A DNA stretch of 64,000 nucleotides, from assembly GCA_038087875.1 (NCBI GenBank), contig JAXLNO010001769.1:1-64000 (forward strand). The letters run 5' to 3'. The notes under the pieces are model-generated. The model saw nothing but the letters and a program-made list of their open reading frames with translations, was not told the origin of the DNA and searched no databases. Numbering within the stretch: the stretch's first letter is position 1; every line of letters begins with the position of its first letter. Made by a program: the position numbers and the translations under genes. This DNA is from Malacoraja senta. Its lineage: Eukaryota. Below are positions 3,666 to 55,887 of the stretch, in pieces.

Positions 3666-3717
3666 ATGATTCTGTTCATCTTGTTGAGTTTCTTCCGCGT
3701 ACAAGGGGCTCAAGCAG
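3666..3717 (+). CDS. MHC class I-like gene, leader (signal peptide) exon
   Basis: ATG at 3666 gives MILFILLSFFRVQGAQA plus 1 nt, a hydrophobic signal ending A-Q-A. It ends at CAG|GCAAGT (GC-type donor) in phase 1. G plus the GG of the alpha1 exon gives Gly1 (…AQA/GPHTL…). The surroundings are non-repetitive and contain CpGs. Confidence 0.75.
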
Positions 3718-3989
3718 GCAAGTTAATGATTCTCATTTTATTCGCTACTGGCTAAAAGCGTCTTGGCTTTATCTCAATCTTGACCGGAGGCGACTGAGTT
3801 TAAAAAAGCGCGCAATACACATTCAGTCTGATTCATGGTTCATGCGGACGGACGTTAAAAGGGTTTAATCTCCACTGTTTCAGTACAATCCAGACTGGAA
3901 TTTCTGCTTTGATTTGCACAATGCCCCGTTTCCTCTGTGGAAGAAGGAACTGCAGATATTGGTTTAAACTGATTTTAACTCGTGTAAAA

Positions 3990-4925
3990 CAAACAGGAGC
4001 GAGGCATGCACTAGGGTTTCCTCGCTGCTCCGCTCTTGCTCTCCCTTCCCCCCACATTCGTAACAAGGACAGAGTCCCCCTTGTCCTCACCTTCCACCCC
4101 ATCAGCCGTCGCACAGCATATGATCCTCCATCATTTTTTGCCACCTCCAACAGGATCCCACTACTGGCCACATCTTCCCATCTCCACCTCTTTCTGCTTT
4201 CCGTGGAGACCATTCCCTCCGAAATTCCCTGGTCAACTCGTCCTTTTCCACCCAAACCACCCCCTCCCCAGGTACTTTCCCCTGCAACCGCAGGAGATGC
4301 AACACGTGTCCCTTTCCCTCCCTTCTCGACTCCATCCAAGGACCCAAACAGTCTTTCCAGGTGAGGCAGAGGTTCACTTGCACCTCCTCCAACCTCATCT
4401 ACTGTATCCGCAGTTGCAGGTGTCAACTTCTCTACATCAGTGAGGCCAAGCACAGGCTCGGCAATCATTTCACTGAACTACTCCGCTCTGTCCATCTTAA
4501 CCTACCTGATCTCCTGGTTGCTCAGCACTTCAACTTCCCCTCCCATTCACAATCTGACCTTTCTGTCCTGGGCCTCCTCCATTGTCAGGGTGAGGCCCAG
4601 TGCAAATTGGAGGAATAGCACCTCATATTTCACTTGGGTAGTTTACACCCCAGCGGTATGAACATTGACTTCTCTAACTTTAAATTGCCCTTGCTTTCCC
4701 TCTCTATCCCCTCCCCCTTCCCAGTTCTTCCACTAGTCTTAGTGTCTTCAACTACATTCTATCTTTGTCCCGTCAACTCCCCTGACATCAGTCTGAAGAA
4801 GGGTCTCGACCCGATAGGTCGCCCATTCCTTCTCTCCAGAGATGCTGCTGGCCTGCTGAGTTACTCCAGCATTTTGTGTCTACCTTCGAGTTAAACCAGC
4901 ATCTGCAGTTCTATCCTACACAAAG
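3990..4925 (+). mobile_element. Penelope-like element 3' fragment (GIY-YIG region plus pLTR), frameshifted
   Basis: Peptides NKDRVPLVLTFHP and RQRFTCTSSNLIYCIRSCRCQLLYISEAK, followed by the pLTR with ctgaagaagggtctcgaccc. Confidence 0.9.
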
Positions 4926-5139
4926 TGCATTGTTTGACAGGTTCAAGTTTATGGCCAAATTCCTCGTATGTTGCAAAACATACTTGGCGAATAAAGTGTG
5001 ATTCTGATTCTGATTGATCTGATTCTGAAATGTGGGAAGAGAGCGAGGCACTAGTACAATGCAAAATCATTAAAAGATTAGCACACACTGTGGATTTTGC
5101 TATTGACTGAGTGACAACTCTTAGCTCCAAACGTGCGGT

Positions 5140-5680
5140 CGTCACGTTTATGTTGTTTAGTAGTGATGTGGATAAGGGGATTGAATGTTTTGTGGCGAAG
5201 TTTGCAGATGATGCTAAAATAGGGGGAGGGGCAGGCAGTGTAGAGGATGCAAGGACTTTGCAGAAGGACTTGTTCGGGTTAGGAGAGTGGGCAGAGAAGT
5301 GGCAGATGAAATCCAGTATAGCAAAGTGTGGAGACATGCATTTTGGTAATAAGAATAAAGGCGTAGATTATTTTACAAATGGAGAGAGAATCCAGAAATC
5401 GGAGGCACACAGTGACATGGGAGTGTTGGTGCAGGACTCCTAAAAGGTTAATTTGCAAATTGAATCGGTAGTCAGGAAGGTGATTTATATCAAGAGGACT
5501 GGAATACAAAAACAGAAAATGCCGCCCGATTTGTAAGAGTGTCAAAGGTCACAGGGAGATGACAGGAGAACGGCACTGAGAGGGAACGATAGGTCAGCCA
5601 TGATTAAATTGTGGAGTAAACTCGATGGGCTGAACAAACAAATTCTGCACCTTTGACTTATGAAGTGAGTCAAAGTTCAG
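5140..5680 (+). mobile_element. CR1 LINE RT fragment
   Basis: Peptide DKGIECFVAKFADDAKIGG…DLFGLGEWAEKWQM…KCGDMHFG. Confidence 0.88.
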
Positions 5681-10054: not shown

Positions 10055-12550
10055 GACCCCCCCCCCCACACCACCCCACCACCCCCCCACCACACATCGC
10101 CTCGTCCCCATTACACCCACCTGCCTTCCTCCGGCCCCAACCCCCATCCCTGCCGGGTGTTCACCATCCCCCCCGACCTCCCCCTCTCCGACATCGAACG
10201 GTCTGTCCTCAGCAGAGGTCTTACCTTTGTCCCCCTCCGTCCCCATCTCAATGAGTTCCGTGCCCTCCATGACTTGGAACGCTTCTACCGTCGCCTCCGC
10301 CTCACAGCTCACTTCCATGGGAAGCAGTCCTCGCTCCCCACTGATGACCCCTTTTCCCGTCTCCAACGCACCCCATCCTCATGGAACCCCCCTCGCAGCC
10401 TTCCGGCTTTAGAACTCTTTATTAAAAACTGCCGCCGTGACATCAGCCGCCTCAACTTCTCCACTCCCCTGTCTCACTCCAATCTCTCCCCCCTTGAACG
10501 CACTGCCATCGACTCACTCCGCAACAACCTAGATTGGGTTATCAAACCCGCCGACAAGGGAGGTGCCGTGGTAGTCTGGCGCATCGACCTCTACAAAGCT
10601 GAGGCCACGCGCCAACTCTCGGACACCTCTTCCTACTTACCCCTGGACCATGACCCCACTGACGAGCACCAGGCCACCATCTCCAGCACCATTACCAACT
10701 TCATCCACTCCCACGCCCTGCCCGAACGAGCCTCCAACCTCATCGTTCCCCAGCCCCGCACAGCCCGCTTTTACCTTCTCCCCAAAATCCACAAACCTGA
10801 CTGTCCCGGTAGACCCATTGTCTCTGCCTGTTCTTGCCCCACCGAACTCATCTCCACCTACCTCGACTCCATACTATCCCCCTTGGTTAAATCCCTCCCC
10901 ACCTATGTTCAAGACACCTCAGACACTCTCCGTCATCTCCGCGCATTCCACTCTCTAGGCCCTCACCCCCTCATCTTCACCATGGACGTCCAGTCACTGT
11001 ACACCTCCATCCCCCACCAGGATGGTCTCAAAGCCCTCCGTTTTTTCCTCGACCGTAGAAGCAATCTATACCCGGCCACTGACACCCTCCTCCGCCTAGC
11101 GGAGCTGGTACTTACACTTAATAACTTTTCATTTGACTCCTCCCATTTCCTCCAAATACAAGTCGTAGCTACGGGCACACACATGGGCCCCAGCTACGCC
11201 TGCCTCTTTGTCGGGTACGTAGAACAATCCCTGTTCAATGCGTACCAGGGCCCCATCCCAGACCTCTACCTCCGCTACATCGATGATTGTTTTGGTGCCA
11301 CATCCTGCACCCACACACAACTGACTGACTTCATCCGCTTCACCACCAACTTCCATCCGGCACTCAAATACACCTGGACCATTTCCGACACTTCCCTACC
11401 ATTCCTTGACCTCACTATCTCCATCGCAGGTGATAGACTCCTTACCGACATCCACTACAAACCTACCGACTCCCATGGCTATCTGGACTACACTTCTTCC
11501 CACCCTGCTTCCTGTAAGGACTCCATCCCCCACTCCCAATTCCTCCGTCTACGCCGCATCTGCTCCCAGGATGAGGCGTTCCACACCAGGGCATCTGAAA
11601 TGTCCTCATTCTTCAGGGAACGGGGGTTCCCCTCCTCCACCATAGATGAGGCTCGCACCAGGGTCTCTGCCATACCCCGCAACACTGCTCTCTCTCCCCA
11701 TCCCCCCACTCACAACAAAGGCAGAGTCCCCCTAGTCCTCACCTTTCACCCCACCAGCCGTCACATACAACAAGTGATCCTCCGTCAGTTCCGCCACCTC
11801 CAACGTGACCCCACCACTCGCCACATCTTCCCATCTCCCCCTATGTCTGCCTTCCGCAAAGACCGCTCCCTCCGTAACTCCCTTGTCAATTCTTCCCTTC
11901 CCTCCCATACCACCCCCTCCCCTGGTACTTTCCCTTGCAACCGCAAGAGATGCAACACTTGTCCCTTCACTTCCCCCCTCCACTCCATTCCAGGACCCAA
12001 GCAGTCGTTCCAGGTGCGACAGAGGTTCACCTGCATCTCCTCCAACCTCATCTATTGCATTCGCTGCTCTAGATGCCAGCTGATCTACATCGATGAGACC
12101 AAGCGGAGGCTTGGCGATCGTTTCGCAGAACACCTCCGGTCGGTCCGCAATAACCAACCTGAACTCCCGGTGGCTCAGCACTTCAACTCCCCCTCCCATT
12201 CCGTATCTGACCTCTCTGTCCTGGGTCTCCTCCATGGCCACAGCGAGCAACACCGTAAATTGGAGGAAATGCACCTCATATTCCGCTTGGGCAGTCTACA
12301 TCCTGGTGGCCTGAACGTTGAATTCTCCCAATTCTGCTAGCCCTGGCTGTCCCCTCCCCTTCATCAGCCATCTGGTTGTCTCCGCCTCTCCCCCAGCCCT
12401 CGGGCTCCTCCTCCTCCTTTTCCTTTTTTCCTTTCTTCTCCCCACCCCCTATCAGTCTGAAGAAGGGTTTCGGCCCGAATCGTTACCTATTTCCTTCGCT
12501 CCATAGATGCTGTTGCACCCGCTGAGTTTCTCCAGCATTTTTGTGTACCA
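10055..12550 (+). mobile_element. Penelope-like retroelement, 5'-truncated, with pLTR
   Basis: Contains the 10157-12340 ORF and ends in the pLTR (12340-12550). Confidence 0.95.
10157..12340 (+). CDS. Penelope RT plus GIY-YIG endonuclease ORF (727 aa, starts at a GTG, N-terminus probably missing)
   Basis: IKPADKGG, LPKIHK…GRPIVS, FTMDVQSLYTSIP, YLRYIDD, FLDLTI, YKPTDS, CNRKRCNTC, NLIYCIRC…YIDETKR, HFNSPSHS. Confidence 0.9.
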   Translation: MFTIPPDLPLSDIERSVLSRGLTFVPLRPHLNEFRALHDLERFYRRLRLTAHFHGKQSSLPTDDPFSRLQRTPSSWNPPRSLPALELFIKNCRRDISRLNFSTPLSHSNLSPLERTAIDSLRNNLDWVIKPADKGGAVVVWRIDLYKAEATRQLSDTSSYLPLDHDPTDEHQATISSTITNFIHSHALPERASNLIVPQPRTARFYLLPKIHKPDCPGRPIVSACSCPTELISTYLDSILSPLVKSLPTYVQDTSDTLRHLRAFHSLGPHPLIFTMDVQSLYTSIPHQDGLKALRFFLDRRSNLYPATDTLLRLAELVLTLNNFSFDSSHFLQIQVVATGTHMGPSYACLFVGYVEQSLFNAYQGPIPDLYLRYIDDCFGATSCTHTQLTDFIRFTTNFHPALKYTWTISDTSLPFLDLTISIAGDRLLTDIHYKPTDSHGYLDYTSSHPASCKDSIPHSQFLRLRRICSQDEAFHTRASEMSSFFRERGFPSSTIDEARTRVSAIPRNTALSPHPPTHNKGRVPLVLTFHPTSRHIQQVILRQFRHLQRDPTTRHIFPSPPMSAFRKDRSLRNSLVNSSLPSHTTPSPGTFPCNRKRCNTCPFTSPLHSIPGPKQSFQVRQRFTCISSNLIYCIRCSRCQLIYIDETKRRLGDRFAEHLRSVRNNQPELPVAQHFNSPSHSVSDLSVLGLLHGHSEQHRKLEEMHLIFRLGSLHPGGLNVEFSQFC

Positions 12551-23829: not shown

Positions 23830-24189
23830 GGGAAGATGTGGCGAGTGGTGGGGTCACGTTGGAGGTGGCGAAACTGACGGAGGATCACTTGTTGTATGTG
23901 ACGGCTGGTGAGGTGAAAGGTGAGGACTAGGGGGACTCTGCCCTTGTTGTGAGTGGGGGGATGGGGAGAGAGAGCAGTGTTGCGGGGTATGGCAGAGACC
24001 CTGGTGCGAGCCTCATCTATGGTGGAGGAGGGGAACCCCCGTTCCCTGAAGAATGAGGACACTTCAGATGCCCTGGTGTGGAACGCCTCATCCTGGGAGC
24101 ATATGCGGCGTAGACGGAGGAATGTTTACACTCTATTTGGAGACACAGAACAAAGAAGTGTCTGACCCAAAACATCATCTGTCCATTCC

Positions 24190-29723: not shown

Positions 29724-29984
29724 GGCCTCACACACTGATCTATTACTACACCCTGAACCACGGGAGTACTCATCTACCAGAATATAGTGTCGTGGGTGAA
29801 CTGGATGGTTGTGAGATACAGTATTATGACAAAAACATGGTCATTACAGTTCCAAGACAGAAATGGATGGCGGCTGCATTTGACAGGAATTACTGGGTAA
29901 CAAATACGGTCTCTGAAACTGGTTTCCATGGAATCATCAAAGGGCAAGTCGATGAATGGATGCGGAGGCAGAACGAAACAGCAA
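29724..29984 (+). CDS. MHC class I-like gene, alpha1 domain exon
   Basis: Acceptor ttgtgtctAG, donor GTtagt, 261 nt, phase 1-1. Encodes GPHTLIYYYTLNHGSTHLPEYSVVGELDGCEIQYYDKNMVITVPRQKWMAAAFDRNYWVTNTVSETGFHGIIKGQVDEWMRRQNETA, with class I alpha1 hallmarks H3, Y7, VG..DG, P..W, YW and the terminal N-x-T sequon. Confidence 0.93.
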
Positions 29985-36600: not shown

Positions 36601-37596
36601 TAAGAATACCAAGGAAAGGTAGCGCAGCTACACATCACTGGATATCTTTAACCTGTTCAATGCCACCGCCGAGTACACTAGGGGTCATGGCCAATAGTGA
36701 AAAATAAACTTGGCAGTGAACAGCTTAATGGTCTCCATATTTTAGAGAAAGCCTTCAATGCCCATGAGGGGTGAGCCTTATTATATCTATGTTTCTCTAA
36801 ATATAGGAAGCACTTTTGTGGTAAAAGATGGGGCAGCTCGGGCCTCGAAAAGATCCAACCTTATGTGCAGCTTTATATTTGTTTATATGCAATAAGCAAA
36901 AAGAACACAATAGAAGATAAAACATGATAATAATTATAAGCAAAGCCAAGAGATCGTGGCCTTACACGAGTTGCTGCCTTGCAGCACCAGAGACCCTGGT
37001 TTGAACCTGACTACGAGTGGTGACTGTACGGAGTTTGCATGTTCTCCCCATAACCTGTGTGGCTTTTCTCTGAGATGTAGGTAAATTGGCTTGGTGTAAA
37101 TGTAAATTGTCCCTAGTGTGGGCTGAAGGGCCTGTTTCAGCACTGTATCTCCAAAGCAGTGGTTCTTAACCTGGGGGTCGTGGCCCCCATGGGGGTCGTT
37201 TGGGGTTTTTCCGGGGGTCATGAAGGGGTTGTAAAGAACATCAATTTGTTGAGCCTATTTTTAGGAACCTAACAAAGGTACATACCACACACAGTATTTT
37301 GTTCACGAATGCGCTTACGTATACACAGGGCCTATGAGAGGGGGGTGCAGGGGGTACATCGTATGCGGGCCCAGAGTCCAATAGGAGCCCGGGAGCTGAA
37401 GGAGGGGGGGTGGGAATTTCCTGAAATCTCAGAAAATGTTTGCATATATTTTGTGAATACTAGCATTCACATTTTGTGCCTTCGGAGTTTTATATATTGT
37501 AATTCGTAGAAATTGTGATCCATAATAAAGCAGGGAATATTAACTGGTGGTGTGTGGTCGGGGTACCTGATTAAAAGAGAGGGAAGGGGAAGACCT

Positions 37597-40459
37597 ATCA
37601 CTACTGATGGATCTTCCCTGTAGGAGGAGGGAGAGCACTAGGTCCCAACAGAGTCATCACTACTGATGGATCTTCCTGCAGGAAGAGGGAGAGCACTAGG
37701 ACCCAACAGAGTCATCACTACTGATGGATCTCCCTGCAGGAGGAGGGCACTAGGACCCAACTGACTGATGGATCTGCCCTATAGTGGGGGGGAGCACTAG
37801 GACCCAGCAGAGTCATCACTACTGATTGATCTTCCCTGCAGGAGGAGAGCACTAGGACCCAGCTGACCGATGGATCTGCCCTATAGTGGGGGGGAGCACT
37901 AGGACCCAGCAGAGTCATCACTACTGATTGATCTTCCCTGTAGGGGGAGGGGGACTAGGACCCAACTGACCGATGGATCTGCCCTATAGTGGGGGGGAGC
38001 ACTAGGACCCAGCAGAGTCATCACTACTGATGGATCTTCCCTGCAGGAGGAGGGAGAGCACTAGGACCCAGCAGAGTCATCACTACTGATTGATCTTCCC
38101 AGTAGGGGGAGGGGGACTAGGACCCAGCTGACCGATGGATCTGCCCTATAGGGGGGGAGCACTAGGACCCAGCAGAGTCATCACTACTGATTGATCTTCC
38201 CTGCAGGAGGAGAGCACTAGGACCCAGCTGACCGATGGATCTGCCCTATAGGGTGGGGGGGACACTAGGACCCAGCAGAGTCATCACTACTGATTGATCT
38301 TCCCTGCAGGAGGAGGGGGACTAGGACCCAGCTGACCGATGGATCTGCCCTATAGGGGGGGGAGCACTAGGACCCAGCAGAGTCATCACTACTGATTGAT
38401 CTTCCCTGTAGGGGGAGGGGGACTAGGAGCCAGCTGACCGATGGATCTGCCCTATAGGGGGGGGGAGCACTAGGACCCAGCAGAGTCATCACTACTGATT
38501 GATCTTCCCTGCAGGAGGAGGGAGAGCACTAGGACCCAGCTGACCGATGGATCTGCCCTATAGGGGGGGGAGCACTAGGACCCAGCAGAGTCATCACTAC
38601 TGATTGATCTTCCCTGCAGGAGGAGAGCACTAGGACCCAGCTGACCGATGGATCTGCCCTATAGGGGGGGGGAGCACTAGGACCCAGCAGAGTCATCACT
38701 ACTGATTGATCTTCCCTGTAGGGGGAGGGGGACTAGGAGCCAGCTGACAGATGGATCTGCCCTATAGGGGGGGGGAGCACTAGGACCCAGCAGAGTCATC
38801 ACTACTGATTGATCTTCCCTGCAGGAGGAGAGCACTAGGACCCAGCTGACCGATGGATCTGCCCTATAGGGGGGGAGCACTAGGACCCAGCAGAGTCATC
38901 ACTACTGATTGATCTTCCCTGCAGGAGGAGAGCACTAGGACCCAGCTGACCGATGGATCTGCCCTATAGGGGGGGGAGCACTAGGACCCAGCAGAGTCAT
39001 CACTACTGATTGATCTTCCCTGCAGGAGGAGAGCACTAGGACCCAGCTGACCGATGGATCTGCCCTATTGGGGGGGGGGAGCACTAGGACCCAGCAGAGT
39101 CATCACTACTGATTGATCTTCCCTGTAGGGGGAGGGGGACTAGGAGCCAGCTGACCGATGGATCTGCCCTATAGGGGGGGGGAGCACTAGGACCCAGCAG
39201 AGTCATCACTACTGATTGATCTTCCCTGCAGGAGGAGAGCACTAGGACCCAACTGACCGATGGATCTGCCCTATATGGGGGGGGGCACTAGGACCCAGCA
39301 GAGTCATCACTACTGATTGATCTTCCCTGTAGGGGGAGGGGGACTAGGACCCAGCTGACCGATGGATCTGCCCTATAGTGGGGGGGGGGAGCACTAGGAC
39401 CCAGCAGAGTCATCACTACTGATTGATCTTCCCTGTAGGGGGAGGGGGACTAGGACCCAGCTGACCGATGGATCTGCCCTATAGTGGGGGGGGGGGAGCA
39501 CTAGGACCCAGCAGAGTCATCACTACTGATTGATCTTCCCTGTAGGGGGAGGGGGACTAGGACCCAGCTGACCGATGGATCTGCCCTATAGGGGGGGGGG
39601 GGAGCACTAGGACCCAGCAGAGTCATCACTACTGATTGATCTTCCCTGCAGGAGGAGAGCACTAGGACCCAGCTGACCGATGGATCTGCCCTATAGGGGG
39701 GGGGAGCACTAGGACCCAGCAGAGTCATCACTACTGATTGATCTTCCCTGCAGGAGGAGAGCACTAGGACCCAGCTGACCGATGGATCTGCCCTATAGGG
39801 GGGGGAGCACTAGGACCCAGCAGAGTCATCACTACTGATTGATCTTCCCTGCAGGAGGAGGGAGAGCACTAGGACCCAACTGACCGATGGATCTGCCTTA
39901 TAGGGGGGGGGAGCACTAGGACCCAGCAGAGTCATCACTACTGATTGATCTTCCCTGCAGGAGGAGGGAGAGCACTAGGACCCAGCTGACTGATGGATCT
40001 GCCCTATAGGGGGGGGAGCACTAGGACCCAGCAGAGTCATCACTACTGATTGATCTTCCCTGTAGGGGGAGGGGGACTAGGACCCAGCTGACCGATGGAT
40101 CTGCCCTATAGGGGGGGGGGGAGCACTAGGACCCAGCAGAGTCATCACTACTGATGGGTCTTCCCTGCAGGAGGAGAGCACTAGGACCCAGCTGAGTCAT
40201 CACTACTGATTGATCTTCCCTGTAGGGGGAGGGGGACTAGGAGCCAGCTGACCGATGGATCTGCCCTATAGGGGGGGGGGAGCACTAGGACCCAGCAGAG
40301 TCATCACTACTGATTGATCTTCCCTGCAGGAGGAGAGCACTAGGACCCAACTGACCGATGGATCTGCCCCATAGGGGGGGGGAGCACTAGGACCCAGCAG
40401 AGTCATCACTACTGATTGATCTTCCCTGTAGGGGGAGGGGGACTAGGAGCCAGCAGAGT
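37597..40459. repeat. Dimeric minisatellite of about 100 bp (alternating units of about 55 and 46 bp)
   Basis: Unit A is agcactaggacccagcagagtcatcactactgattgatcttccctgcaggaggag and unit B is agcactaggacccagctgaccgatggatctgccctatag(g)n. Confidence 0.97.
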
Positions 40460-40778
40460 TAGACCACGTGCTGCCTGCATGGTGGAGGTTGTGGGCCTGG
40501 TGCTGAACCGGGAAGGTGACGGCTCTGGCCCGCTGGTGGCCGGTGGAGAGGCAAGTGTCGGCGGAGTCGCTGGCGGAGGCCCGTGGGGAGCTGGAGTAGA
40601 GATATGGGCTTTCCAGCGACAGTGGCTGTGGTGTCCCCGCCCGGGGAGATGGTGACAGACGGCAGCCACGGCTGTTTCAGTGGTCCGGGCCTGCGTTTGG
40701 GTGGGGGTGGGGGTGGGGGTGTGGGAGAGTGGGCGTGGGTAAGTGGGTGGATTTGTGTGGGTGGGGGTGTAGGTCAGT

Positions 40779-40779
<1 letters not shown>

Positions 40780-40837
<58 letters not shown>

Positions 40838-40861
40838 TATGTGAGTAGGTGAGTGAGTGTG
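40780..40861. repeat. (GT)n microsatellite abutting the gap
   Basis: Direct reading. Confidence 0.95.
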
Positions 40862-41680
40862 NNNNNNNNNNNNNNNNNNNNNNNNNNNNNNNNNNNNNNN
40901 NNNNNNNNNNNNNNNNNNNNNNNNNNNNNNNNNNNNNNNNNNNNNNNNNNNNNNNNNNNNNNNNNNNNNNNNNNNNNNNNNNNNNNNNNNNNNNNNNNNN
41001 NNNNNNNNNNNNNNNNNNNNNNNNNNNNNNNNNNNNNNNNNNNNNNNNNNNNNNNNNNNNNNNNNNNNNNNNNNNNNNNNNNNNNNNNNNNNNNNNNNNN
41101 NNNNNNNNNNNNNNNNNNNNNNNNNNNNNNNNNNNNNNNNNNNNNNNNNNNNNNNNNNNNNNNNNNNNNNNNNNNNNNNNNNNNNNNNNNNNNNNNNNNN
41201 NNNNNNNNNNNNNNNNNNNNNNNNNNNNNNNNNNNNNNNNNNNNNNNNNNNNNNNNNNNNNNNNNNNNNNNNNNNNNNNNNNNNNNNNNNNNNNNNNNNN
41301 NNNNNNNNNNNNNNNNNNNNNNNNNNNNNNNNNNNNNNNNNNNNNNNNNNNNNNNNNNNNNNNNNNNNNNNNNNNNNNNNNNNNNNNNNNNNNNNNNNNN
41401 NNNNNNNNNNNNNNNNNNNNNNNNNNNNNNNNNNNNNNNNNNNNNNNNNNNNNNNNNNNNNNNNNNNNNNNNNNNNNNNNNNNNNNNNNNNNNNNNNNNN
41501 NNNNNNNNNNNNNNNNNNNNNNNNNNNNNNNNNNNNNNNNNNNNNNNNNNNNNNNNNNNNNNNNNNNNNNNNNNNNNNNNNNNNNNNNNNNNNNNNNNNN
41601 NNNNNNNNNNNNNNNNNNNNNNNNNNNNNNNNNNNNNNNNNNNNNNNNNNNNNNNNNNNNNNNNNNNNNNNNNNNNNNNN
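40862..41680. other. Assembly gap (819 N)
   Basis: Run of N flanked on both sides by GT-rich simple sequence. Confidence 1.
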
Positions 41681-41734
41681 TGAGTGAGTGTGTGTCTGAG
41701 TGTATGTGTGTGTTAGTGGGAGGGTGAATTTTAT

Positions 41735-41955
41735 AAATGAAGTTAAAACCATTAGATCTGTTGAACTTGTTAACAGACTATTGACTTGGTAACCTGTTTC
41801 CAAATGTTTGTGTTAGCTTCAGAATACTATTAACAATTCCAGCAACAGTAGCTTCTGCAGAGAGGTCATTTAGCAAACTCAAGCTGATTAAGAATTATTT
41901 AAGGTCGACAATGTCTCATGAACGTCTTGTGGATTTGGCCAGGCTAAGTATTCAA
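41735..41955 (+). pseudogene. hAT C-terminal dimerisation domain fragment
   Basis: PLDLLNLLTDY*LGNLFPNVCVSFRILLTIPATVASAERSFSKLKLIKNYLRSTMSHERLVDLARLSI. Confidence 0.9.
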
Positions 41956-42765
41956 AGTCAGTTTTATTCATCACATACACCCGAAGGTGCAGTGAAGTGA
42001 ATTTGCCAGCAGTGATACATGTAAAAAGAACACACAATACACAATAAAATTGAACACAAACATCCACTACAGCATTCTTCACTGTGGTGGAAGGCAACAA
42101 GTTTCAGCAAGTCCTCCATTGTTCACCCGTGTTCGGGGCCATAACCCCTCCGTAGTCGCCGCTAGGGACGGCCCGATGTACAAGGCCCTCTCGTCGGGAT
42201 GATCCAAACTCCGACGTTGGGACGGACAAACACACTCTGCGGCTTGGAGGTCCCGACTCGGCACTTTCCTACTGGAGACCGCAGCTTCAGGATGTTATAG
42301 GCCACAGGCCAGCGGTTTTGCGGTTAAATATAAAAGGATGTTTCAATGTGAATTCTTTCTCCTTATCTGTATTGTAGCATAAACAAAGATGTTCAAAACA
42401 AAGGTAGATAAAATGCTGGAGAAACTCAATGGGTGAGGCAGCATCTATAGAGTGAAGGAAAACAAATGTGCTTGCTGATCCTTTTATGTTATTTATATTT
42501 ATTTATATTTATCATGGAGGGTGTATAGGGACATAAGGCCTCAAATGCAGAAAATCAACAGAGCGCCCCATTCCACCCCTCTCTCAACTTCCATACCCCT
42601 TTTTGCCGTGCAGGCTACAGCTCATGGCATAAAACTGTAGCATAGTGGATAAAAACAGGATGACTAATGGAGAAGGGAAGGGGGCCCAAAATAAACTTTG
42701 TACCCACTGATAACATTCCTGTGAGGCCCTGCGTATACACGCACAAACAGTGTGTGTTGTGAACC

Positions 42766-44517
<1,752 letters not shown>

Positions 44518-44739
44518 CTGAGCATTGGCAGACATGTTTTAATAAATCGGGCTGTTTTTTTTCAAATTTTGTTTTAGAGGTCACGGTACTGATCAAGAAT
44601 GCCTGATGGGGTCGTGGGGCCAAAAAGATTAAGAACCACTGCTCTAAAGCTTAAAACTAAAGGGGCTAATAAAGGCCACAAAGTGGCTTTAGTGAGTCGG
44701 ATTACAGAAAATCCCACATCTTTTTCAAGGTTTCATGGT

Positions 44740-45425: not shown

Positions 45426-45539
45426 AGTTGGATTGCTTAAGGATATAGAAGGGAATATGTGCTTGGAGTTTGTGGATATAGGCGAGGTTTGGTTTCACCA
45501 AGGAAGACATGTAGAATAGTAAGGACCATTAATAGTAAG

Positions 45540-46335: not shown

Positions 46336-46489
46336 TTTCTTACACATGGAGAATCAATGTGGAGAATGCTAACATGCAGGGACACTTTGAAGTTAAGTAA
46401 GAAGGAGATGTTGGATCACTTGAAGAGAAATGTGGATAAATCCCCAGGACAGAGGGGTGTAGTGGATGATAATAATAATCGTTGAAAAC

Positions 46490-46660
46490 ATTAGTGCCGT
46501 CCTGGTTTCCAACGGGCACGGTGATGGACGCACCACACATCTCTGTCCTCCATGCAGCTGGCAAGCTCCTCTTTTGTCTCTACACATGCGTCTTCCATCA
46601 ACGTCTTCAACATCGTCTTGAATGGCCATCCTGGGTCAAGTCTTCCATGGGTGGAAGACG
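46490..46660 (-). mobile_element. RTE-like LINE C-terminal fragment
   Basis: GRLDPGWPFKTMLKTLMEDACVETKEELASCMEDRDVW. Confidence 0.55.
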
Positions 46661-46679
46661 CATGCCAGCAAACAGGCAT

Positions 46680-48065
46680 GTCTGGCATTTAACGAGCATT
46701 GATGTATATATTGTAGACTTTCGTCCCAAATATCTTTCGTTATGGGTTGGCCTAATTCATTTTCCCATGTGTGTCTATATAAATCCGTCGGCGGGACCTC
46801 ACTATCTAAGAGGGTATTATAAATATGAGATATTAATTTTTCTGTATTAAGATTCAAGATTCAAGATTCAAGAAGTTTATTGCCATGTCAACTGAGTTGA
46901 TAGGAATTTGACTTGCCATGCAGCACACAAATAAAGATTACAACAAAGAATTTAACAGTAAACATAAAAACATCCCCCCACAATGGTTCCCACTGTGGGG
47001 GAAGGCAGCAAAGTCCAGTCCCATCCCCAGTTCACCCATAGTCGGGGCCTATTGAGGCCTCTGCAGTCGCCGCTACGGCAGCACGATGCCTCAGGCCCTC
47101 TCGCCGGATGATGAAGCTCCGGCGTCGGGTGAACACTCTCAGCGGCCCGGAGTGTCTGGAGCGGCTGCCTCCTCCCAGTAGACCGCGGCTCCCGAAGTCC
47201 ACGAGCCGCGCTGGTCGATGCCCCGACTCTGTCGACCTCGTCGTCAGATCCCAGGCTCCGCGGTGTTCCAAGCTCAGCGCCGCTGGAAGCTCCACTGACC
47301 GCAGACCGCAGCTCTGCGATGTTAGTGCTGGCCGTCACAGCACTCCGGAGCTTACTGCACGGCGACCCGGGTTAGGCATCGCCCACTCCGCGATGGTGCT
47401 TCAGCGCTGTGCCGCCGCCGAAGCTGAAGTCCTGGCTGGTCCCGGCAGGAAAACGCCGCTCCAGCCTGCCCGTAGGCCGCGAGGAAGGGGCGAAGATACG
47501 GCTCGGAGAAAAGCCGCATCTCCGACCAGGTAGGGACTGAGAAGAATAGTTTCCCCCTTCCCCCTACCCCCCCCCCCCCACATAAAAAGACTAAAAGATC
47601 TCCAACCAACACTCTCAACTAACTAAAAATAAAAAAAGAGTGAAAAAACTAACAGCTGCTGGCGGGGCAGCCATATTCGACGGCGCCCCCTGTTGATGTT
47701 ATTAGGATGTTTATTCAAACATTCATCAAGGATTTCTGGTTCCCTAGTTCTGTAATCTTGTGTATTTGATTTAATGTAATCTCTAATTTGTAAATATCTG
47801 AAAAAGTTATTTGAGTGTGGTCCGTAAATCTGTTGTAACCCCTGAAATTAAAGAAAAGTGCCTTTCCTATAAAGATGTCCCATCTTTTTAATTCCTTAAT
47901 TTTTCCATTGTGTAAAGCCTTTATCCAACATGGAGGGTTTGAATAAAGGGTTGTTTATAATGGGGAGACAGAGTGATAAATTATCCAATTTTAAAGTCTT
48001 TTATAATTGTTTCCAAATTCGTATACCACTATATATTATAGAATTTTCACTATAGGTTTTTTAAT
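46680..48065 (-). mobile_element. L1 ORF2 C-terminal fragment, split by the 46855-47695 insertion
   Basis: NPIVK…NNPLFKPSMLDKGFTQW…FFRYLQIRDYIK continues across the insert into NTEKLISHIYNTLL…WENELG…IHQCSLNARH. Confidence 0.8.
46855..47695 (-). mobile_element. Non-coding LINE-tail retroelement, apparently complete
   Basis: 5' end gggggcgccgtcgaatatggctgcc, GC-rich body, and a 3' (cttgaat)n tail. Confidence 0.65.
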
Positions 48066-48069
48066 GCAA

Positions 48070-48365
48070 TTTTGTGGGAGCAAACATAATCGAACCAATT
48101 TCAAAAGGCAAACAGTCTTTCACTATTTTGTATGACTCAATGAGGTCCCCCCTTATTCTTCTAAACTCCAGCGAGTACAGGCCCACTGCCATCAAATGGT
48201 CATCATATGTTAACCCATTCATTCCTGGGATCATTCTTGTACACCTCCTCTGGACACTCTCCAGAGCCAACACATCCTTCCTCAGATATGGTGCCCAAAA
48301 TTGCTCACAATGCTCCAAATGTGGCCTGACCGGCGCCTTATAGAACCTCAGCATTACATCCCTGT
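48070..48365 (-). mobile_element. CR1 fragment
   Basis: RFYKAPVRPHLEHCEQFWAPYLRKDVLALESVQRR. Confidence 0.9.
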
Positions 48366-51010
48366 TTGACAGGGAGAAAGTGTAATTGATGTCTTTCATA
48401 TTAGTTAACCATGGATTTTCTTGACCACAGTTGACAGCCCCTAATGGGATTGCATGTCTATCACACATCTCAAAAGAGCACAGCATTAAGCTTCGAAGGG
48501 CAAAATTTACACGAGTTGTGCAGGTCAAGTGTTTTTTTGCACAGAGAGAGCTTGATACCTAGAATGCGCTACCAGGAGTGGTGGTAGAGGAAGACATGAT
48601 AATGGTGCTTAAGAAGGTTTTGGACAGGCTTGTGAATGTGCAGCGAATACAAGGATATGGATCACATGCAGGCAGTGGAAATCAGTTTTGGTTTAGTTTA
48701 GAGATAGAGTATGGAAACAGGATCTTTGGGCCACTGAGTCTGCACTGACCAGCAATTGCCCATTCACTATTTTTGTCCTACAAGCTAGGGACAATTTACA
48801 GAAGCCAATTAACCTACAAACCTGCACGTCTTTTGTATTTGGGAGGAAACCGTAGCCCCCAGAGAAAACCCACAGGGTGACAGAGAGAACGTACAAACTC
48901 CGTCCAGACAGCACTCTAGTCAGGATCGAACCCGGGTCTCTAATGCTGTAAGACAGCCATTCTATCACTGTGCCACTGTGTTGCCTTAGTTTAACTTGGT
49001 ATCCTGTTCGACATGGACATTGCAGGCTGAAAGTCCTGTTCTTGTACTGTTCTATGTTCTATATATTCTCATTGGACAGGGCAGAGTTTTTCACTCCTCC
49101 AGCCTCCATGTTGAATACTTACTCCCAGTTTAAATCTGATTCAATTAGTCAATCCATTTCTCCCCCCCCCCCCTCCTGCCATGATCCCCATTCTATATCT
49201 TGAAGTAGTCATTCCCTTTTTCACTCCCTGGTCTGTCTACTATCCCCACAACTTTCCTCTACTTTCCTGTCTTGGTGCATGCAACATCTATCCATTTACC
49301 TCTTCCCTTCCTACTGTCCATAGACCCAGGCAGTTCTTCAAAGTGAAACAGCGTGAAACACTTGCACTTCCAGTCAAATCTACTGCATTTGGTTTTCATG
49401 ACGTAATCTTCCACATTGCATCAATGAAACAAATAGAATGGCTGCTTTCTGGAGAACCTGCATTCAATCCATGGGACTTTCTAAGATTCCTAATTCCTGC
49501 CACTTTAATTCTCCATTCAACACCCACCATGATCCATCCATCTGTACCTCTTACACTAGGATAACAAGGGTGAAAGTAACCTTGAGGACCAACAACTCAG
49601 CTTCTACCTTGACATGTTGCAGCCTTTCACACTCAATTCCACGTTCAACAAGTTGTATTCCCTGTCGATAAAAGAACTGGTCATTTCATAAGTTCATGTT
49701 CATTTATTGTCACATACACCAATTGGTGTAGTAAAATTCACTGGCCAGGTCAGTCATACAATTTAAAAAAGCAACAGACTCAAAAACACATTTTGACATA
49801 AACATCCATCATAGTGACTCCTACACATTCCTCACTGTGATGGAAGGCGAAAATAAAGTTCCAAGTCCTTCCCTTGTTGTTCTTCCTTGGTCGGGGGCCT
49901 CGAGCCCCCCGTTGAACGGACGGTCTTGAGTCCCGTAGCCGGCGGCGTTCGGACCCTCCGCGTCGAGGTGATCAGCTCCCGCATCGGGGGGATTGTCAGC
50001 TCCCCTGCGCCGGGCGATCGAACCTCGCGTCGGGGCTGGACGAACCTTCTGTGGCGTTGGAGCTCCCGACTAGCCTCTCCCGAGACTGGGAGCCCTTGAT
50101 GGTAAGTTCGCAGGCCGCGTTGGGAGCGATCCCAGGCAAGGGATCCGCTCCGATGGTAAGTTAACGCCCCGTGGTGGGGCTCACGACGGTCCTTTTCAAC
50201 TGTTAAGTTGAAGTCAGAAAGAACAGATGCAAGAAGTATGAAGAAGGACACCAAGCTGAAACATTACGTAACCATGTCTTCCAGATGCTGCCTGAGCCAC
50301 TGAGTTACACCTGCACGTTTTTGTGTTTTTTTTAAATTACAGTAAAGTTATCCACCTGCAAAATCAGGACAGCCTGACCTACTTGAGTACTGCAGTATGT
50401 GCTGCATTTTATATAACTCTGTTTAGTTTCATGCATGCAGAGATGCAGTGAAATGGTTTGGATGGAACAGCAGATGCTGGACACCCCGTCCCTTCTCTCC
50501 AGAGATGCTGCCTGTCCCGCTGAGTTACTCCAGCTTTTTGTGTCTGTCTGCAGTGAAATGGTTGTTCTGCATTCTCCCCAGTCAAGTCATACTGTACATA
50601 AGTACAATTCGTCCTCTTCTGGAACAGCACACAGAGATCCACCACATTCCAGGACTATCTTGCAGCTTCCAAGTCTCTGAGAAGTCTGATTTTGCCCTAA
50701 GGAAATACCCAATTTCACATTTTCTCATGTTAAGGCCCAGTGTCATAACAGCACTGGATTGATGAAGTAGAGGCGCCTGCCTCAGTTTAAGTTTTTCTGT
50801 TTCAAGATTGTGATCAAACCCTCGTCACTGGAACTGTGTCGCAGTGCCACCCATTACGTATCAGTCCCAATTATCTTTCAACATGCTGGAATCACTTGTT
50901 TTTTATCCTTTTTAGACTTTTTTCATGAATTGTTCAGCTTAAACAGTTATGCTACAGCAGTTAAGCGCAGCTACCACTTAGTTCCAGAGACGTAACAACA
51001 CAAGAGATAG

Positions 51011-52823: not shown

Positions 52824-53090
52824 TTTCCCCTGAGGTCACTCTCGCTGCCCGCCCTGATGATCATTCAGTCCTGTACTGCACTGTGTTTGGATTTTACCCA
52901 CCGGCCATCAATGTCAGCTGGTTGCAGAATGGTCAACATGTCTCTGAGACCAAATCTTCTGGGGTCATACCCAACAACGATGGAACATATCATCTAAGGT
53001 CTGTCCTTGAGTATGATCCGTATGATGGGAAACAGTATTCCTGTCATGTCGATCACAGCAGCCTGCCCGGTGGGAAGACCATCATCTGGG
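52824..53090 (+). CDS. MHC class I-like gene, alpha3 (Ig C1-set) exon
   Basis: Acceptor ctgtcttgtAG, donor GTaaga, 267 nt, phase 1-1. Encodes xSPEVTLAARPDDHSVLYCTVFGFYPPAINVSWLQNGQHVSETKSSGVIPNNDGTYHLRSVLEYDPYDGKQYSCHVDHSSL PGGKTIIW, with C1-set C/W/C, GFYP, PNxDGTY and YSCxVxHSSL. Confidence 0.95.
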
Positions 53091-53389
53091 GTAAGAACAT
53101 TAAATATTCTTTCATAGATAATCATTATCTTCTGTTGTTTCCATTTTAATCATCATGAATACATCCCATATTCCAAGATGCTTAAACTTTCTTTGTTTAG
53201 TGGTGTTGCTCTAAGTAATCACGTAATCAGCACCCACTCTCCACATGAGCAGAAGACTTTGTCAACAGAACATTTATCAAAAGTAAATAAATAACTAATA
53301 TACAAGGAAGGAGTATTTGAGATTCTCAGTGGTGGAACTGAAATCTATGAAAGGTATGTTTAAATAAAAAATGAATCTTTCCTCATGAT

Positions 53390-54115
53390 GTGATTAACAA
53401 CAAGGCACTGGGGGAGTACATGCCCCAATCTGAATCAATGGTCTGAAGTGGAAATGATTGAGAGCTTCATGTTCCTTGGCATGAATTTATCCAATATTCT
53501 GTAAAGGACTGACCACATAGCCAAGGAGGCACACCAACACCTCTACTTCCTCAGGAGACTGAGAATATTCATCATGTCTCTGGTGACTCTAGCAAACATC
53601 TATAGATGCCGCTAGAGAAAGCATGTTGTTGGGTTGCATCACATCTTGATTTGGGAACTGCACTGCCCAAGACTGCAAGAATATACAAAGAGTTAAAGAT
53701 CATCACACAGGCCAGACTTCCCACTATTGGCTCAATCTACACTAGGTTGCCTTGGAAAACGAGACTTATCCCAACCTTCCTCCTTCTTGCTCCCATCAGG
53801 CATTAGGTACAGAAAGTTGAAAATATGCACTGCCAGACTCAGGAACACCCCCTTTCCACCTGTTAACAGGCTTCGGAAGGGTCCTTCCATAATGTAGGTT
53901 TAATGCCCGATTCACCTCAACCTCATTGAACATTGAACATTGTCCATGGAACTGATGTGTTACAATGCTGAGAACTATATTCTGTACTCTGTATCCTCCT
54001 CTTTGCTCTATCTATTGTTTTTGAGTTTGTATTTATGTGTAGTTTTATAATTTGTTTGGATAGCATACAAAACAAACTTTGCTCATATTTTGAAACATCT
54101 GGCGTTAATAAAACT
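53390..54115 (+). mobile_element. Old Rex1 fragment in the alpha3-TM intron
   Basis: aaggaggcacaccaacacctctacttcctcaggagactgag, corresponding to K.A.Q.LYFLRRL. Confidence 0.75.
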
Positions 54116-55779
54116 AAACCTAATGAAGTAAGTTCCATGACGCAAGTTACAGATTCAGCAACGAAAAATATAACTGCCTGACAAACAGCGATCGTAGAAG
54201 TTTGATTCCAAGTATGCTGCACTAACCTACACAAATGCTCACTTTTGAAGATTCCCTCGAACAATGCACAACTAAGGAATCTGATGTTTCACTCTGAAGA
54301 CTGTTGACATACCCCAGAACTTAATTTCCAACCTATCTATGTATCATCAGCAATCTAGGCTACAGCGCCACCAGTCCCTTCATCTGCTCTTAATACCAAC
54401 GATAAGTAGTTCACTTTCTTGCATTGATTCCCAACCTGCAGTTGCAGTTTCCCAACCAGAACACTCCTTTAAGACAACTCTCTGCTTGCTCTTAATTGTT
54501 TTTCCATTCATGCTAATTATTACCCCCAATGTCATAAGCCATGTGCCTTTGCATCACTTGATCAGATATCTTATGAAAATCCAGATATTGTGGCGACATC
54601 TGGTGGTCAGGCCACTTATTGCTAGAACCCTCGTCAGGGGAGCTGGGACTATCACGTGAGTGACAGGGTTTTGGTGGGAGTTGGTGATGAGTTAATCGCC
54701 AGTCAACTGGTGTGCCCGATAACAACGGCAGGAACTTTGCTCAAGTCCTTACTAAACGCGAGTGGGCCAAAACTGTATTTCTTTAAAAAAACATTGATTT
54801 GTTCACGACGTTTGGATCTCTACAATATATTGTATTTCTTTTGTTTCTCATTCCAATTTTGTTACCTATTCTGCTTTTCCATCATTTTGTTTATGAATTT
54901 TAGGCTTTTCACACCTGCTGCTCGAATATACATTGTCTACGGGTTCCTGTTGCATTTTCAAAGAGTTCTAATCAATTTCTCAAACAAAGTTTGAAGAAGG
55001 GTCCCAAAACGAAACGTCACCTGTCCATGTGTAAGAAGAAACTGCAAATGCTGGTTTACACCAAAGATGGACACAAATTGCTGGAATAACTCAGCTGGTC
55101 AGCCAGCATCTCTGGAGAAAAGGAATAGGTGATGAATCCATGTTCGCCAGAGATGCTGCCTGTTCCGCTGAGTTACTCCAGCATTTTGTGTCTATTATGT
55201 ATATTCTTTCCACTGACTGGTTAGCATGAAACAAAAGCTTTTCACTGTACCTCAATACATGTGACAATAAACTAAACTAAAGCTTTTGTGTAAATCAGTA
55301 TCTGCATCTCTTTCTTTCTACAATTTTCCTGATAATGCCCTGATAATGCACTTTATTGTTTTGTTATTACTTAAATGTTCTGCCATTATTGAAAGGAATC
55401 CAGCATTTTCCCCAAAACAAATGTTAGTTTATATAGGGTTAAAGCTTTCTGCTTTCAATTCACCTTCTTTCATGAATTAAGTTGTGGCTGTGATGGTGCC
55501 ATATATCATAGAGTTGTACAGAACATATATTGTCCCTTTGCCATGCTGCAGAACTCCGTGATTCAAAACACCATATCATCTTATATACCTTGAAAAGCCC
55601 CAAATATAGACACAAAATGCTGGAGTAACTCAGCGGTCAGGTAACATCTCTAGAGAAAAGGAATAGGTGGCATTTCGGGTCGAGACCCTTCTTCACCCTG
55701 AAGTCTTCAGACAGTGCCCATCTATTTAGCTGCACAGCTTAACAATTGATTTGTAAAATTATGCATTCTTATTTTTCAG

Positions 55780-55887
55780 AAGGAAATAGGAAGAAAGACA
55801 GGCACATAGGCCTTATTGCCGTGTGTGTGCTGATATTGCTGGCTATTGTCTTGGCAGTAATTGTTTTGTGGAGAAAAAAGAGGAGAG
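55780..55887 (+). CDS. MHC class I-like gene, connecting peptide/transmembrane exon
   Basis: Acceptor atttttcAG, donor GTaaga, 108 nt, phase 1-1. Encodes EGNRKKDRHIGLIAVCVLILLAIVLAVIVLWRKKRR: a hydrophobic span followed by a basic stop-transfer cluster. The downstream cytoplasmic exon was not identified. Confidence 0.88.

What the first reader, a model, noticed from the sequence alone, without database searches (positions are those of the whole stretch)
3666..55887. MHC class I-like gene that appears to lack an alpha2 exon (leader-alpha1-alpha3-TM)
Seen: four open exons with intact splice sites, all phase 1, so alpha1 can splice directly to alpha3 in frame (…RQNETA-I-SPEVTL…), giving 229 codons through the TM exon. 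Reading the 22.8-kb alpha1-alpha3 interval, I found only repeats and short unique spacers, with no alpha2 signature (HxxQxxxGC, YDGxDF, CxxWL). The only hidden sequence is the gap, which lies inside two nested hATs whose TSDs match across it and is flanked by GT repeats. Known: class I needs alpha1 plus alpha2 for the groove and for part of the beta2m interface; HLA-G2 is an alpha1-alpha3 splice form reported to homodimerise in a class II-like way. Inference: this is either a genomically encoded two-domain class I chain or a young pseudogene that recently lost alpha2.
Basis: partly seen in the sequence, partly recalled or inferred. Interest (0 to 1): 0.8.

Follow-up and report, generated by a model that had tools for sequence, protein, structure and literature searches.

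The report
Skate class I gene missing alpha2
One copy of a multi-copy skate immune gene (a non-classical MHC class I gene) has had the exon for its second domain cut out and replaced by repeat-derived DNA, so it is most likely a recently crippled copy and not a new kind of two-domain immune molecule.

Summary
The leader (3666-3717), alpha1 (29724-29984), alpha3 (52824-53090) and TM (55780-55887) exons are open and all phase 1. No alpha2 exon exists in the sequenced 64 kb.

The gene belongs to a skate/shark non-classical class I family. Its solved relative, PDB 9ch4, and its counterparts in three skates all have three domains. The window is colinear with those three loci.
- **Where alpha2 should be:** just after 46654. 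About 1.42 kb of ancestral DNA, including the 279-nt alpha2 exon, is replaced by 1.46 kb of unrelated, repeat-derived filler (46655-48116).
- **The assembly gap (40862-41680):** it lies 5 kb upstream of that place, inside a hAT-like insertion. The insertion has terminal repeats, an 8-bp target duplication and an empty site in Rhinoraja. The gap therefore hides no alpha2.
- **A second lesion:** the leader donor is GC where all three orthologues have GT.
- **The in-frame join:** alpha1-alpha3 stays in frame automatically because the lost exon is symmetric.

The remaining exons still look constrained, so the loss is young, the copies are homogenised, or, less likely, the two-domain form is used. 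Expression could not be tested.

The scan found this before on other DNA of this genome: six other alpha2-less notes, and two follow-ups reached the same verdict.

The parts
3666..3717 (+). Leader exon (17 codons + 1 nt, phase 1)
   Evidence: Read directly. tblastn hit to the leader of P0001. Aligned with three orthologues.
3718..3723 (+). Intron 1 donor, GCAAGT. It is non-canonical: GT has become GC in this copy only.
   Evidence: A. radiata, L. erinacea and R. longicauda all read GTAAGT here.
29724..29984 (+). Alpha1 exon (261 nt, phase 1-1)
   Evidence: PDB 9ch4_A at E=6e-37. 86% identical to L. erinacea P0001. 92.7-94.6% nt identity to three orthologues.
37157..44641 (.). hAT-like transposon insertion that contains the assembly gap. 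TIR CAGTGGTTCTTAACCT; TSD at 37149-37156 and 44642-44649 (CTCCAAAG / CTCTAAAG).
   Evidence: Inverted repeat I4. Flanks read directly, and the empty site is at L002:29119-29127. A ZMYM1/FAM200/DUF4371-type transposase fragment lies at 43348-43689.
40862..41680 (.). Assembly gap (N run, length estimated). It is intronic, with the same GT/GAGT microsatellite on both edges.
   Evidence: It lies inside the hAT-like insertion and 5 kb upstream of alpha2's orthologous place.
46346..46654 (+). Last conserved block upstream of where alpha2 should be. The left breakpoint is 46654|46655.
   Evidence: Matches L002:29341-29465, L001:52558-52963 and L003:53681-53990. Breakpoint alignment.
46655..48116 (.). 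1.46 kb of filler replacing the alpha2 exon and its flanks. It is a mosaic of repeat-derived pieces.
   Evidence: No counterpart in L002 or L003 at this place. 46818-46863 and 47879-48078 resemble (83% and 67.5%) the 3' part of a LINE in A. radiata that carries APE and RT. 46959-47674 resembles another repeat copy, L001:23250-23940.
48117..49688 (+). First conserved block downstream of the replaced segment
   Evidence: Matches L003:55413-56942, L002:30569 onward and L001:64753-66228.
52824..53090 (+). Alpha3 exon (267 nt, phase 1-1), Ig C1-set
   Evidence: Pfam C1-set at 3e-20. 9ch4_A residues 182-268 at E=8e-35. 95.5-97.4% nt identity to orthologues.
55780..55887 (+). Connecting-peptide/transmembrane exon (108 nt, phase 1-1)
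   Evidence: RNA-like contigs of run X1 join it to alpha3.
59300..64000 (-). Retroelement (RT-bearing) insertion. Colinearity with the orthologues ends here, and the last coding exon is not in the window.
   Evidence: RVT_1 hit at 62195-62458 on the minus strand.

Best explanation
This is a copy of a multi-copy skate non-classical MHC class I gene, the family whose shark member is solved as PDB 9ch4. The normal gene has leader, alpha1, alpha2, alpha3, TM and a short cytoplasmic exon.

In this copy about 1.4 kb containing the whole 279-nt alpha2 exon was lost and replaced by about 1.46 kb of repeat-derived DNA. Part of that filler is LINE-like, so a retroelement-associated deletion is the most likely cause (inferred). 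Without alpha2 the chain cannot build the two-helix ligand groove that defines the family, so as an antigen-presenting molecule it is a null.

The reading frame survives only because the exon is symmetric. The copy is therefore best read as a young gene remnant or null allele within a birth-and-death gene cluster. The other exons have not yet decayed because the event is recent or because neighbouring intact copies homogenise them.

Shown: the absence of alpha2, the breakpoints, the position of the gap inside a transposon, and the GT>GC donor change. Inferred: the mechanism of loss, the lack of function and the recency.
For: - **Three-domain relatives:** 9ch4_A matches alpha1 at residues 3-86 and alpha3 at 182-268, leaving 95 residues of alpha2 between them. 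All close skate proteins carry alpha2.
- **Colinear orthologous loci with alpha2:**
  - A. radiata L001, about 90% nt identity, alpha2 at 53460-53738.
  - R. longicauda L002, about 85%, alpha2 at 29625-29903.
  - L. erinacea L003, about 88-90%, alpha2 at 54471-54749.
- **Mapped breakpoints:** L003:53991-55412 (1422 bp) has no counterpart. The window has unrelated sequence at 46655-48116.
- **Nature of the filler:** it resembles the 3' part of a LINE and another repeat.
- **No alpha2 elsewhere:** none was found by protein or DNA search.
- **The gap:** it lies inside a hAT-like insertion that is absent from R. longicauda.
- **Independent support for the left junction:** short-read-derived contigs of the same organism label hold 0.83 of its sampled words.
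- **Second lesion:** the leader donor is GT>GC in this copy only.
- **Radical changes:** the window-specific amino-acid changes fall at sites invariant in the other skates. They are L>Q in the signal peptide, V>E in alpha1 and W>L after the TM.
- **Earlier verdicts:** two independent follow-ups on other pieces of this genome reached the same conclusion.
Against: - **No decay in the remaining exons:** they have no stop or frameshift.
- **No relaxed constraint:**
  - On the window's own branch the exons changed at 6 of 678 sites, against 39 of 1298 in the flanking introns (Fisher p=0.002).
  - Pairwise dN/dS is 0.3-0.45, the same as between intact orthologues.
  - The terminal branch in the tree is short.
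- **The GC donor may still work:** it sits in the AG|GCAAGT context that GC-AG introns normally use (own knowledge).
- **Other alpha2-less copies:** six other alpha2-less notes exist for this genome. That could mean the form has been propagated.
- **Expression:** it was not testable.
Confidence: 0.75

Rival explanations
1. A genuine genome-encoded two-domain (alpha1-alpha3-TM) class I chain. After the deletion the product is expressed and used, for example as a beta2m-free homodimer that engages a receptor rather than presenting ligand, as reported for the human splice isoform HLA-G2. The form has since been amplified in this skate.
For: - The ORF is open for 229 codons with usable splice signals.
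- The exons are significantly less changed than the flanking introns on the window's own branch.
- dN/dS is 0.3-0.45.
- Six other alpha2-less notes exist on other pieces of the genome.
- HLA-G2 shows that an alpha2-less class I chain can fold as a homodimer and bind LILRB2 (PMC11756389).
Against: - The in-frame join follows automatically from the symmetric phase-1 exon.
- Three related species keep alpha2 at this locus.
- The loss is a repeat-patched deletion.
- The leader donor is GT>GC, and the private substitutions are radical.
- No alpha2-less protein appears among the 24 clustered skate proteins and transcript-derived proteins listed.
- The conservation can be explained by a recent event or by gene conversion within a family that is visibly homogenised inside species.
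- The multiple copies may be haplotigs or passive segmental duplicates.
Confidence: 0.13
2. Alpha2 is present but hidden in the assembly gap, or the alpha1 and alpha3 exons were brought together by a scaffold mis-join.
For: An estimated 819-bp gap could physically hold a 279-nt exon. The true gap length is unknown.
Against: - The gap lies inside a hAT-like element bounded by TIRs and a TSD, and the whole element is absent from the R. longicauda locus.
- Both gap edges are the same microsatellite.
- Alpha2's orthologous place is 5 kb downstream of the gap and is fully sequenced.
- Anchor blocks on both sides of the gap keep the order seen in three other species, from the leader to beyond the TM exon.
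- Contigs of an independent run hold the junction.
Confidence: 0.03
3. It is not a class I gene at all but a class II-type or W-category chain. Those have leader, distal domain, Ig domain and TM as their native exon plan.
For: The exon plan is identical to a class II or W chain. W-category genes combine class II organisation with class I motifs and occur in cartilaginous fish (PMC8713811).
Against: - All solved relatives of alpha1 are class I heavy chains, and the best is 9ch4 with three domains.
- The protein is about 92% identical to three-domain skate class I proteins and nests inside that clade.
- Colinear orthologues carry alpha2.
- No partner-chain exons are in the window.
Confidence: 0.01

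Closest known systems
Skate/shark non-classical MHC class I family annotated 'class I histocompatibility antigen, F10 alpha chain-like' (A. radiata XP_032898133.1, L. erinacea XP_055521885.1, ten R. longicauda paralogues); solved relative PDB 9ch4_A
   Same: The leader, alpha1, alpha3 and TM exons are 86-93% identical at protein level, and the locus is colinear over about 59 kb. The A. radiata orthologue matches 9ch4_A at E=9e-118 over 266 residues.
   Different: The alpha2 exon is missing here. Which named elasmobranch lineage this is (UDA, UEA, UFA or UGA; PMC10751288, PMC12562908) could not be settled, because no named reference sequences were available.
HLA-G2/G6, the alpha2-less splice isoform of human HLA-G
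   Same: The predicted product has alpha1 joined directly to alpha3 plus a TM. HLA-G2 forms a non-disulfide, beta2m-free homodimer with class II-like features and binds LILRB2 (PMC11756389).
   Different: HLA-G2 arises by skipping exon 3 of a gene that keeps it and also makes the full form. Here the exon is deleted from the genome, and no product has been seen.
Class I pseudogenes and gene fragments in MHC class I multigene clusters (birth-and-death evolution; own knowledge)
   Same: One member of a tandem family has lost an essential exon through a repeat-associated rearrangement while its neighbours stay intact.
   Different: The remaining exons carry no stop or frameshift and no measurable relaxation of constraint, so this copy is unusually fresh.
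MHC W-category / class II chains
   Same: Exon plan of leader, distal domain, C1-set domain and TM (PMC8713811).
   Different: Here the plan is secondary, produced by deletion. The sequence is class I, and no paired partner gene is present.

Membership tests
Elasmobranch non-classical class I family (9ch4-like, 'F10 alpha chain-like') | Alpha1 domain of the family | tested here: met
   9ch4_A at E=6e-37. 86% identical to P0001.
Elasmobranch non-classical class I family (9ch4-like, 'F10 alpha chain-like') | Alpha2 domain exon completing the groove | tested here: not met
   No protein or DNA match in the window. Its place is replaced by filler at 46655-48116.
Elasmobranch non-classical class I family (9ch4-like, 'F10 alpha chain-like') | Alpha3 C1-set domain and TM exon | tested here: met
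   Pfam C1-set at 3e-20. 9ch4_A residues 182-268. TM exon 95-97% nt identical to orthologues.
Elasmobranch non-classical class I family (9ch4-like, 'F10 alpha chain-like') | Orthologous genomic position | tested here: met
   Colinear blocks with L001, L002 and L003 from upstream of the leader to beyond the TM exon.
Elasmobranch non-classical class I family (9ch4-like, 'F10 alpha chain-like') | Terminal cytoplasmic exon (13 residues) | tested here: inconclusive
   Not found in the window. A retroelement starts at 59300 and runs to the window end.
MHC class II / W-category chain | Two-domain plan is ancestral, and the distal domain is of class II/W type | tested here: not met
   Orthologues have alpha2. 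All PDB relatives are class I.
MHC class II / W-category chain | Paired partner-chain gene next to it | tested here: not met
   No further MHC-like exon in the 64 kb. Only this window was searched.
Alpha2-less class I isoform of the HLA-G2 type | Alpha1 joined in frame to alpha3 | tested here: met
   Conceptual splice gives 229 open codons.
Alpha2-less class I isoform of the HLA-G2 type | Made by alternative splicing of a gene that retains the alpha2 exon | tested here: not met
   The exon is absent from the genome.
Alpha2-less class I isoform of the HLA-G2 type | Expressed, homodimeric, receptor-binding product | not testable with these tools
   The only RNA-like run (X1) carries another organism label, and its contig's upstream partner exon could not be read.
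Class I pseudogene / gene fragment | Loss of an essential part relative to orthologues | tested here: met
   Alpha2 replaced. Leader donor GT>GC.
Class I pseudogene / gene fragment | Relaxed constraint or disabling mutations in the remaining exons | tested here: not met
   No stop or frameshift. Exons changed at 6/678 sites against 39/1298 in introns. dN/dS is 0.3-0.45.
Class I pseudogene / gene fragment | No productive expression | tested here: inconclusive
   No RNA run of the window's own organism label was offered.

The most novel reading that the evidence does not exclude
The deletion created a usable alpha1-alpha3-TM chain that this skate has kept and amplified. Six other alpha2-less notes on other pieces of the genome would fit this. 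It would be a genome-encoded analogue of HLA-G2 that acts as a beta2m-free homodimeric ligand rather than as an antigen presenter.
Probability: 0.1. Interest if true: 0.75.

Novelty: new member of a known kind. Interest (0 to 1): 0.25.

Why it matters
If it is only a crippled copy, it matters mainly for annotation. Gene predictors can stitch alpha1 to alpha3 and report a spurious two-domain class I protein. It also illustrates retroelement-driven birth-and-death turnover in an expanded elasmobranch class Ib cluster.

It would matter much more if the repeated alpha2-less copies in this genome proved to be expressed and constrained. Class I and class II differ precisely in how two membrane-distal domains are shared between chains, so a natural alpha1-alpha3 chain would be a living example of the class I to class II-like transition.

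Tried and rejected
- **W-category / class II idea.** This was my first thought from the exon plan. I rejected it after the PDB and orthologue comparisons.
- **Homologue searches with single exons.** Two word-index searches returned nothing because of the length filter. Only the search with the full A. radiata protein worked.
- **Exact-sequence look-ups.** Those for P0001 and P0156 found no contig.
- **Pfam on the transposase-like ORFs.** It gave nothing. The hAT assignment rests on the TIR/TSD and on a language-model match.
- **RNA test.**
  - Run X1 is RNA-like. It has depth on alpha3 and TM only, and its contigs join the two exons.
  - Its 226-nt contig across the alpha3 acceptor has 28 unaligned upstream letters that the output did not print.
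  - Its alignment start at 52822 fits either an upstream exon ending in AG, as alpha2 does, or alpha1's AA with one mismatch. The run therefore decides nothing.
  - X1 also carries another organism label and differs from the window in the TM exon.
- **Junction-word search across runs.** Other organisms hold only 0.09-0.30 of the words. That cannot separate a shared deletion from shared repeats.
- **Papers naming the shark class Ib lineages.** They are not held.
- **Structure prediction of the spliced product.** I did not attempt it, because the spliced protein has no reference form.


Full report
**Observation**

The window is 64 kb with one N run at 40862-41680.
- the leader, with its ATG at 3666 and its end at 3717
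- alpha1 at 29724-29984
- alpha3 at 52824-53090
- a connecting-peptide/TM exon at 55780-55887

All junctions are phase 1. Joined together the exons give 688 nt, that is 229 open codons plus 1 nt, with alpha1 running into alpha3 as ...RQNETA-I-SPEVTL.... Alpha3 is a C1-set Ig domain (Pfam 3e-20).

**What family it is**

The alpha1 and alpha3 pieces both find the same best solved structure, 9ch4_A. This is a 268-residue heavy chain. It matches alpha1 at residues 3-86 (E=6e-37) and alpha3 at residues 182-268 (E=8e-35), which leaves 95 residues of alpha2 in between. All further PDB relatives of alpha1 are class I or MR1 heavy chains.

An exhaustive HMMER search with alpha1 found an 86% identical little-skate protein, followed by shark proteins of 63-64% identity. 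Cluster look-ups and a search with the A. radiata protein show a family annotated 'class I histocompatibility antigen, F10 alpha chain-like'. It is present in Amblyraja radiata, Leucoraja erinacea, Rhinoraja longicauda (ten annotated paralogues on one chromosome), sawfish, rays and sharks. Every full-length member has leader, alpha1, alpha2, alpha3, TM and a 13-residue tail. The A. radiata protein matches 9ch4_A at E=9e-118.

In a tree the window's product sits inside the skate clade as sister to A. radiata plus L. erinacea, on a short branch. Reviews mention elasmobranch class Ib lineages UDA, UEA, UFA and UGA. UFA and UGA are said to be CD1-like with a crystal structure (PMC10751288, PMC12562908). 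I could not establish which name applies here.

**Is alpha2 anywhere in the window?**

It is not. tblastn with four three-domain relatives recovers the leader, alpha1, alpha3 and TM but nothing credible for alpha2, even at E<=10 and word size 2. blastn with the alpha2 exon plus flanks from three skate loci gives only matches of 30 nt or less to the exon, together with repeat matches to the flanks.

**Where alpha2 should be**

I fetched the genomic loci of three skate orthologues.

| Species (locus) | nt identity to window | alpha2 exon |
|---|---|---|
| A. radiata (L001) | about 90% | 53460-53738 |
| R. longicauda (L002) | about 85% | 29625-29903 |
| L. erinacea (L003) | about 88-90% | 54471-54749 |

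All three are colinear with the window, from upstream of the leader to 59299 beyond the TM exon.

- **Left breakpoint.** The last shared block before alpha2 is window 46346-46654. It matches L002:29341-29465, L001:52558-52963 and L003:53681-53990.
- **Right breakpoint.** The first shared block after alpha2 starts at about 48117. It matches L003:55413 and L002:30569.
- **Ancestral state.** L. erinacea and R. longicauda are contiguous with each other across this interval at 88% identity.
- **Replacement.** L003:53991-55412, which is 1422 bp and includes the alpha2 exon, has no counterpart in the window. The window instead holds 1462 bp of unrelated sequence at 46655-48116.
- **Nature of the filler.** Window 46818-46863 and 47879-48078 resemble (83% and 67.5%) the 3' part of a 5.9-kb LINE that carries APE and RT domains. 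In A. radiata that LINE sits 93 bp downstream of alpha2 with a 17-bp target duplication. Window 46959-47674 resembles another repeat copy. The similarity is too low for the A. radiata insertion to be orthologous to the window's filler.

I therefore read the event as a retroelement-associated deletion in the window's lineage. The mechanism is inferred. The breakpoints are shown.

**The gap**

The scan's program asked that the gap be tested first.
- The gap is intronic, so no reading frame crosses it.
- Both of its edges are the same GT/GAGT microsatellite.
- It lies inside an element spanning 37157-44641. The element has 16-nt terminal inverted repeats (CAGTGGTTCTTAACCT) and 8-bp flanking duplications (CTCCAAAG and CTCTAAAG).
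- The element carries a ZMYM1/FAM200/DUF4371-type (hAT superfamily) transposase fragment.
- In R. longicauda the two flanks abut, and 9 nt (L002:29119-29127) align to both copies of the duplication. Everything between the repeats, gap included, is therefore an insertion.
- Alpha2's own place is 5 kb downstream of the gap and is fully sequenced.
- Contigs from a run with exact intron matches to the window (X4) hold 0.83 of the sampled words across the left junction. That run may come from the same individual as the assembly.

**Signs of decay, and their absence**

The in-frame alpha1-alpha3 join carries no weight. The missing exon is 279 nt with phase 1 on both sides, so removing it always keeps the frame.

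One canonical splice site has changed. The leader donor reads GCAAGT here and GTAAGT in all three orthologues. The nearest GT would shift the frame. GC donors in this context can work (own knowledge), so this is a possible lesion, not a proven one.

Window-specific coding changes are few. There are six nucleotide changes: L>Q in the signal peptide, V>E in alpha1 (two changes in one codon), W>L just after the TM, and two synonymous changes. Alpha3 has none. The three replacements are radical and fall at sites invariant in the other skates.

On the same branch the flanking introns changed at 39 of 1298 aligned sites, against 6 of 678 in the exons (Fisher p=0.002). Pairwise dN/dS is 0.3-0.45, no different from comparisons among intact orthologues. 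So the remaining exons were constrained, or homogenised by neighbouring copies, for most of the branch. The loss is either recent or tolerated.

**Expression**

No RNA run with the window's own organism label was offered.

One RNA-like run (X1), from another label, shows depth only on alpha3 and TM and has contigs that join them. Its contig crossing the alpha3 acceptor has 28 upstream letters that were not shown. The alignment start fits either an alpha2 or an alpha1 partner, so this run decides nothing.

No alpha2-less protein is among the 24 members of the two skate clusters, which include transcript-derived sequences.

**Earlier notes of this scan**

Six other first-reader notes describe alpha2-less copies of this gene on other pieces of the same genome. 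They are s1-140132, s1-140120, s1-140273, s1-140387, s1-140375 and s1-140604.

Two of these have follow-ups. One concluded 'deletion of about 1.4 kb' and the other 'deletion patched by a piece of a jumping gene'. Those descriptions match what I mapped here, which suggests one event followed by duplication or haplotig redundancy. I could not compare the sequences.

**Verdict**

- **Most likely (0.75):** a young, repeat-patched alpha2 deletion in one copy of an expanded non-classical class I family. The copy is a null for ligand presentation.
- **Functional two-domain chain (about 0.1-0.13):** not excluded, because constraint is not visibly relaxed and the form recurs in the genome.
- **Hidden exon or mis-join (0.03):** contradicted by the transposon boundaries and the colinearity.
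- **Native class II or W-type gene (0.01):** contradicted by the orthologues.

Noticed in passing
window 55867: The T that makes the private Leu codon (W>L after the TM) is almost absent from run X4, which otherwise matches the window's introns exactly. About 99% of the depth there shows G, as in the orthologues. X1, X6 and X7 also show G. The T may be a rare allele, a copy-specific variant or a consensus error.
   Followed up: partly
window 3645-3665: A. radiata and L. erinacea have an in-frame upstream ATG that adds 7 residues (MREAVRE/MREVVRE). In the window that ATG is followed at once by TGA (CGA>TGA). R. longicauda lacks the upstream ATG too, so the ATG at 3666 is probably the real start.
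   Followed up: partly
L001:53832-59754 (A. radiata): A 5.9-kb LINE with APE and RT ORFs sits on the minus strand only 93 bp downstream of the alpha2 exon. It has a 17-bp target duplication and is absent from L. erinacea. This spot next to alpha2 has been hit by retroelements more than once.
   Followed up: yes
window 10157-12340: An uninterrupted 727-residue retroelement ORF with a reverse-transcriptase domain lies in intron 1. Fragments of the same element type recur at 22164-24062, 32352-32654 and 45459-46112.
   Followed up: partly
window 59300-64000: An RT-bearing retroelement on the minus strand ends colinearity with the orthologues 1.15 kb before the expected last coding exon. The gene's 3' end is therefore displaced by at least 4.7 kb or lost.
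   Followed up: partly
L. erinacea proteins P0152, P0153, P0155, P0169: NCBI isoform models fuse this class I gene to a downstream GPR139-like receptor gene. The fusions pull a GPCR into the same 90% protein cluster. This is probably a read-through or annotation artefact.
   Followed up: no
R. longicauda chromosome CM130181.1 (cluster of P0164): Ten annotated paralogues are more than 90% identical to each other and group by species in the tree. This points to recent expansion or concerted evolution of the family in skates.
   Followed up: partly
other pieces of this genome (scan notes s1-140272, s1-140373, s1-140388): Other notes describe copies with alpha1 and alpha2 but no alpha3, running into an NXPE gene. 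Together with the alpha2-less copies, this suggests the cluster holds several kinds of partial class I genes.
   Followed up: no
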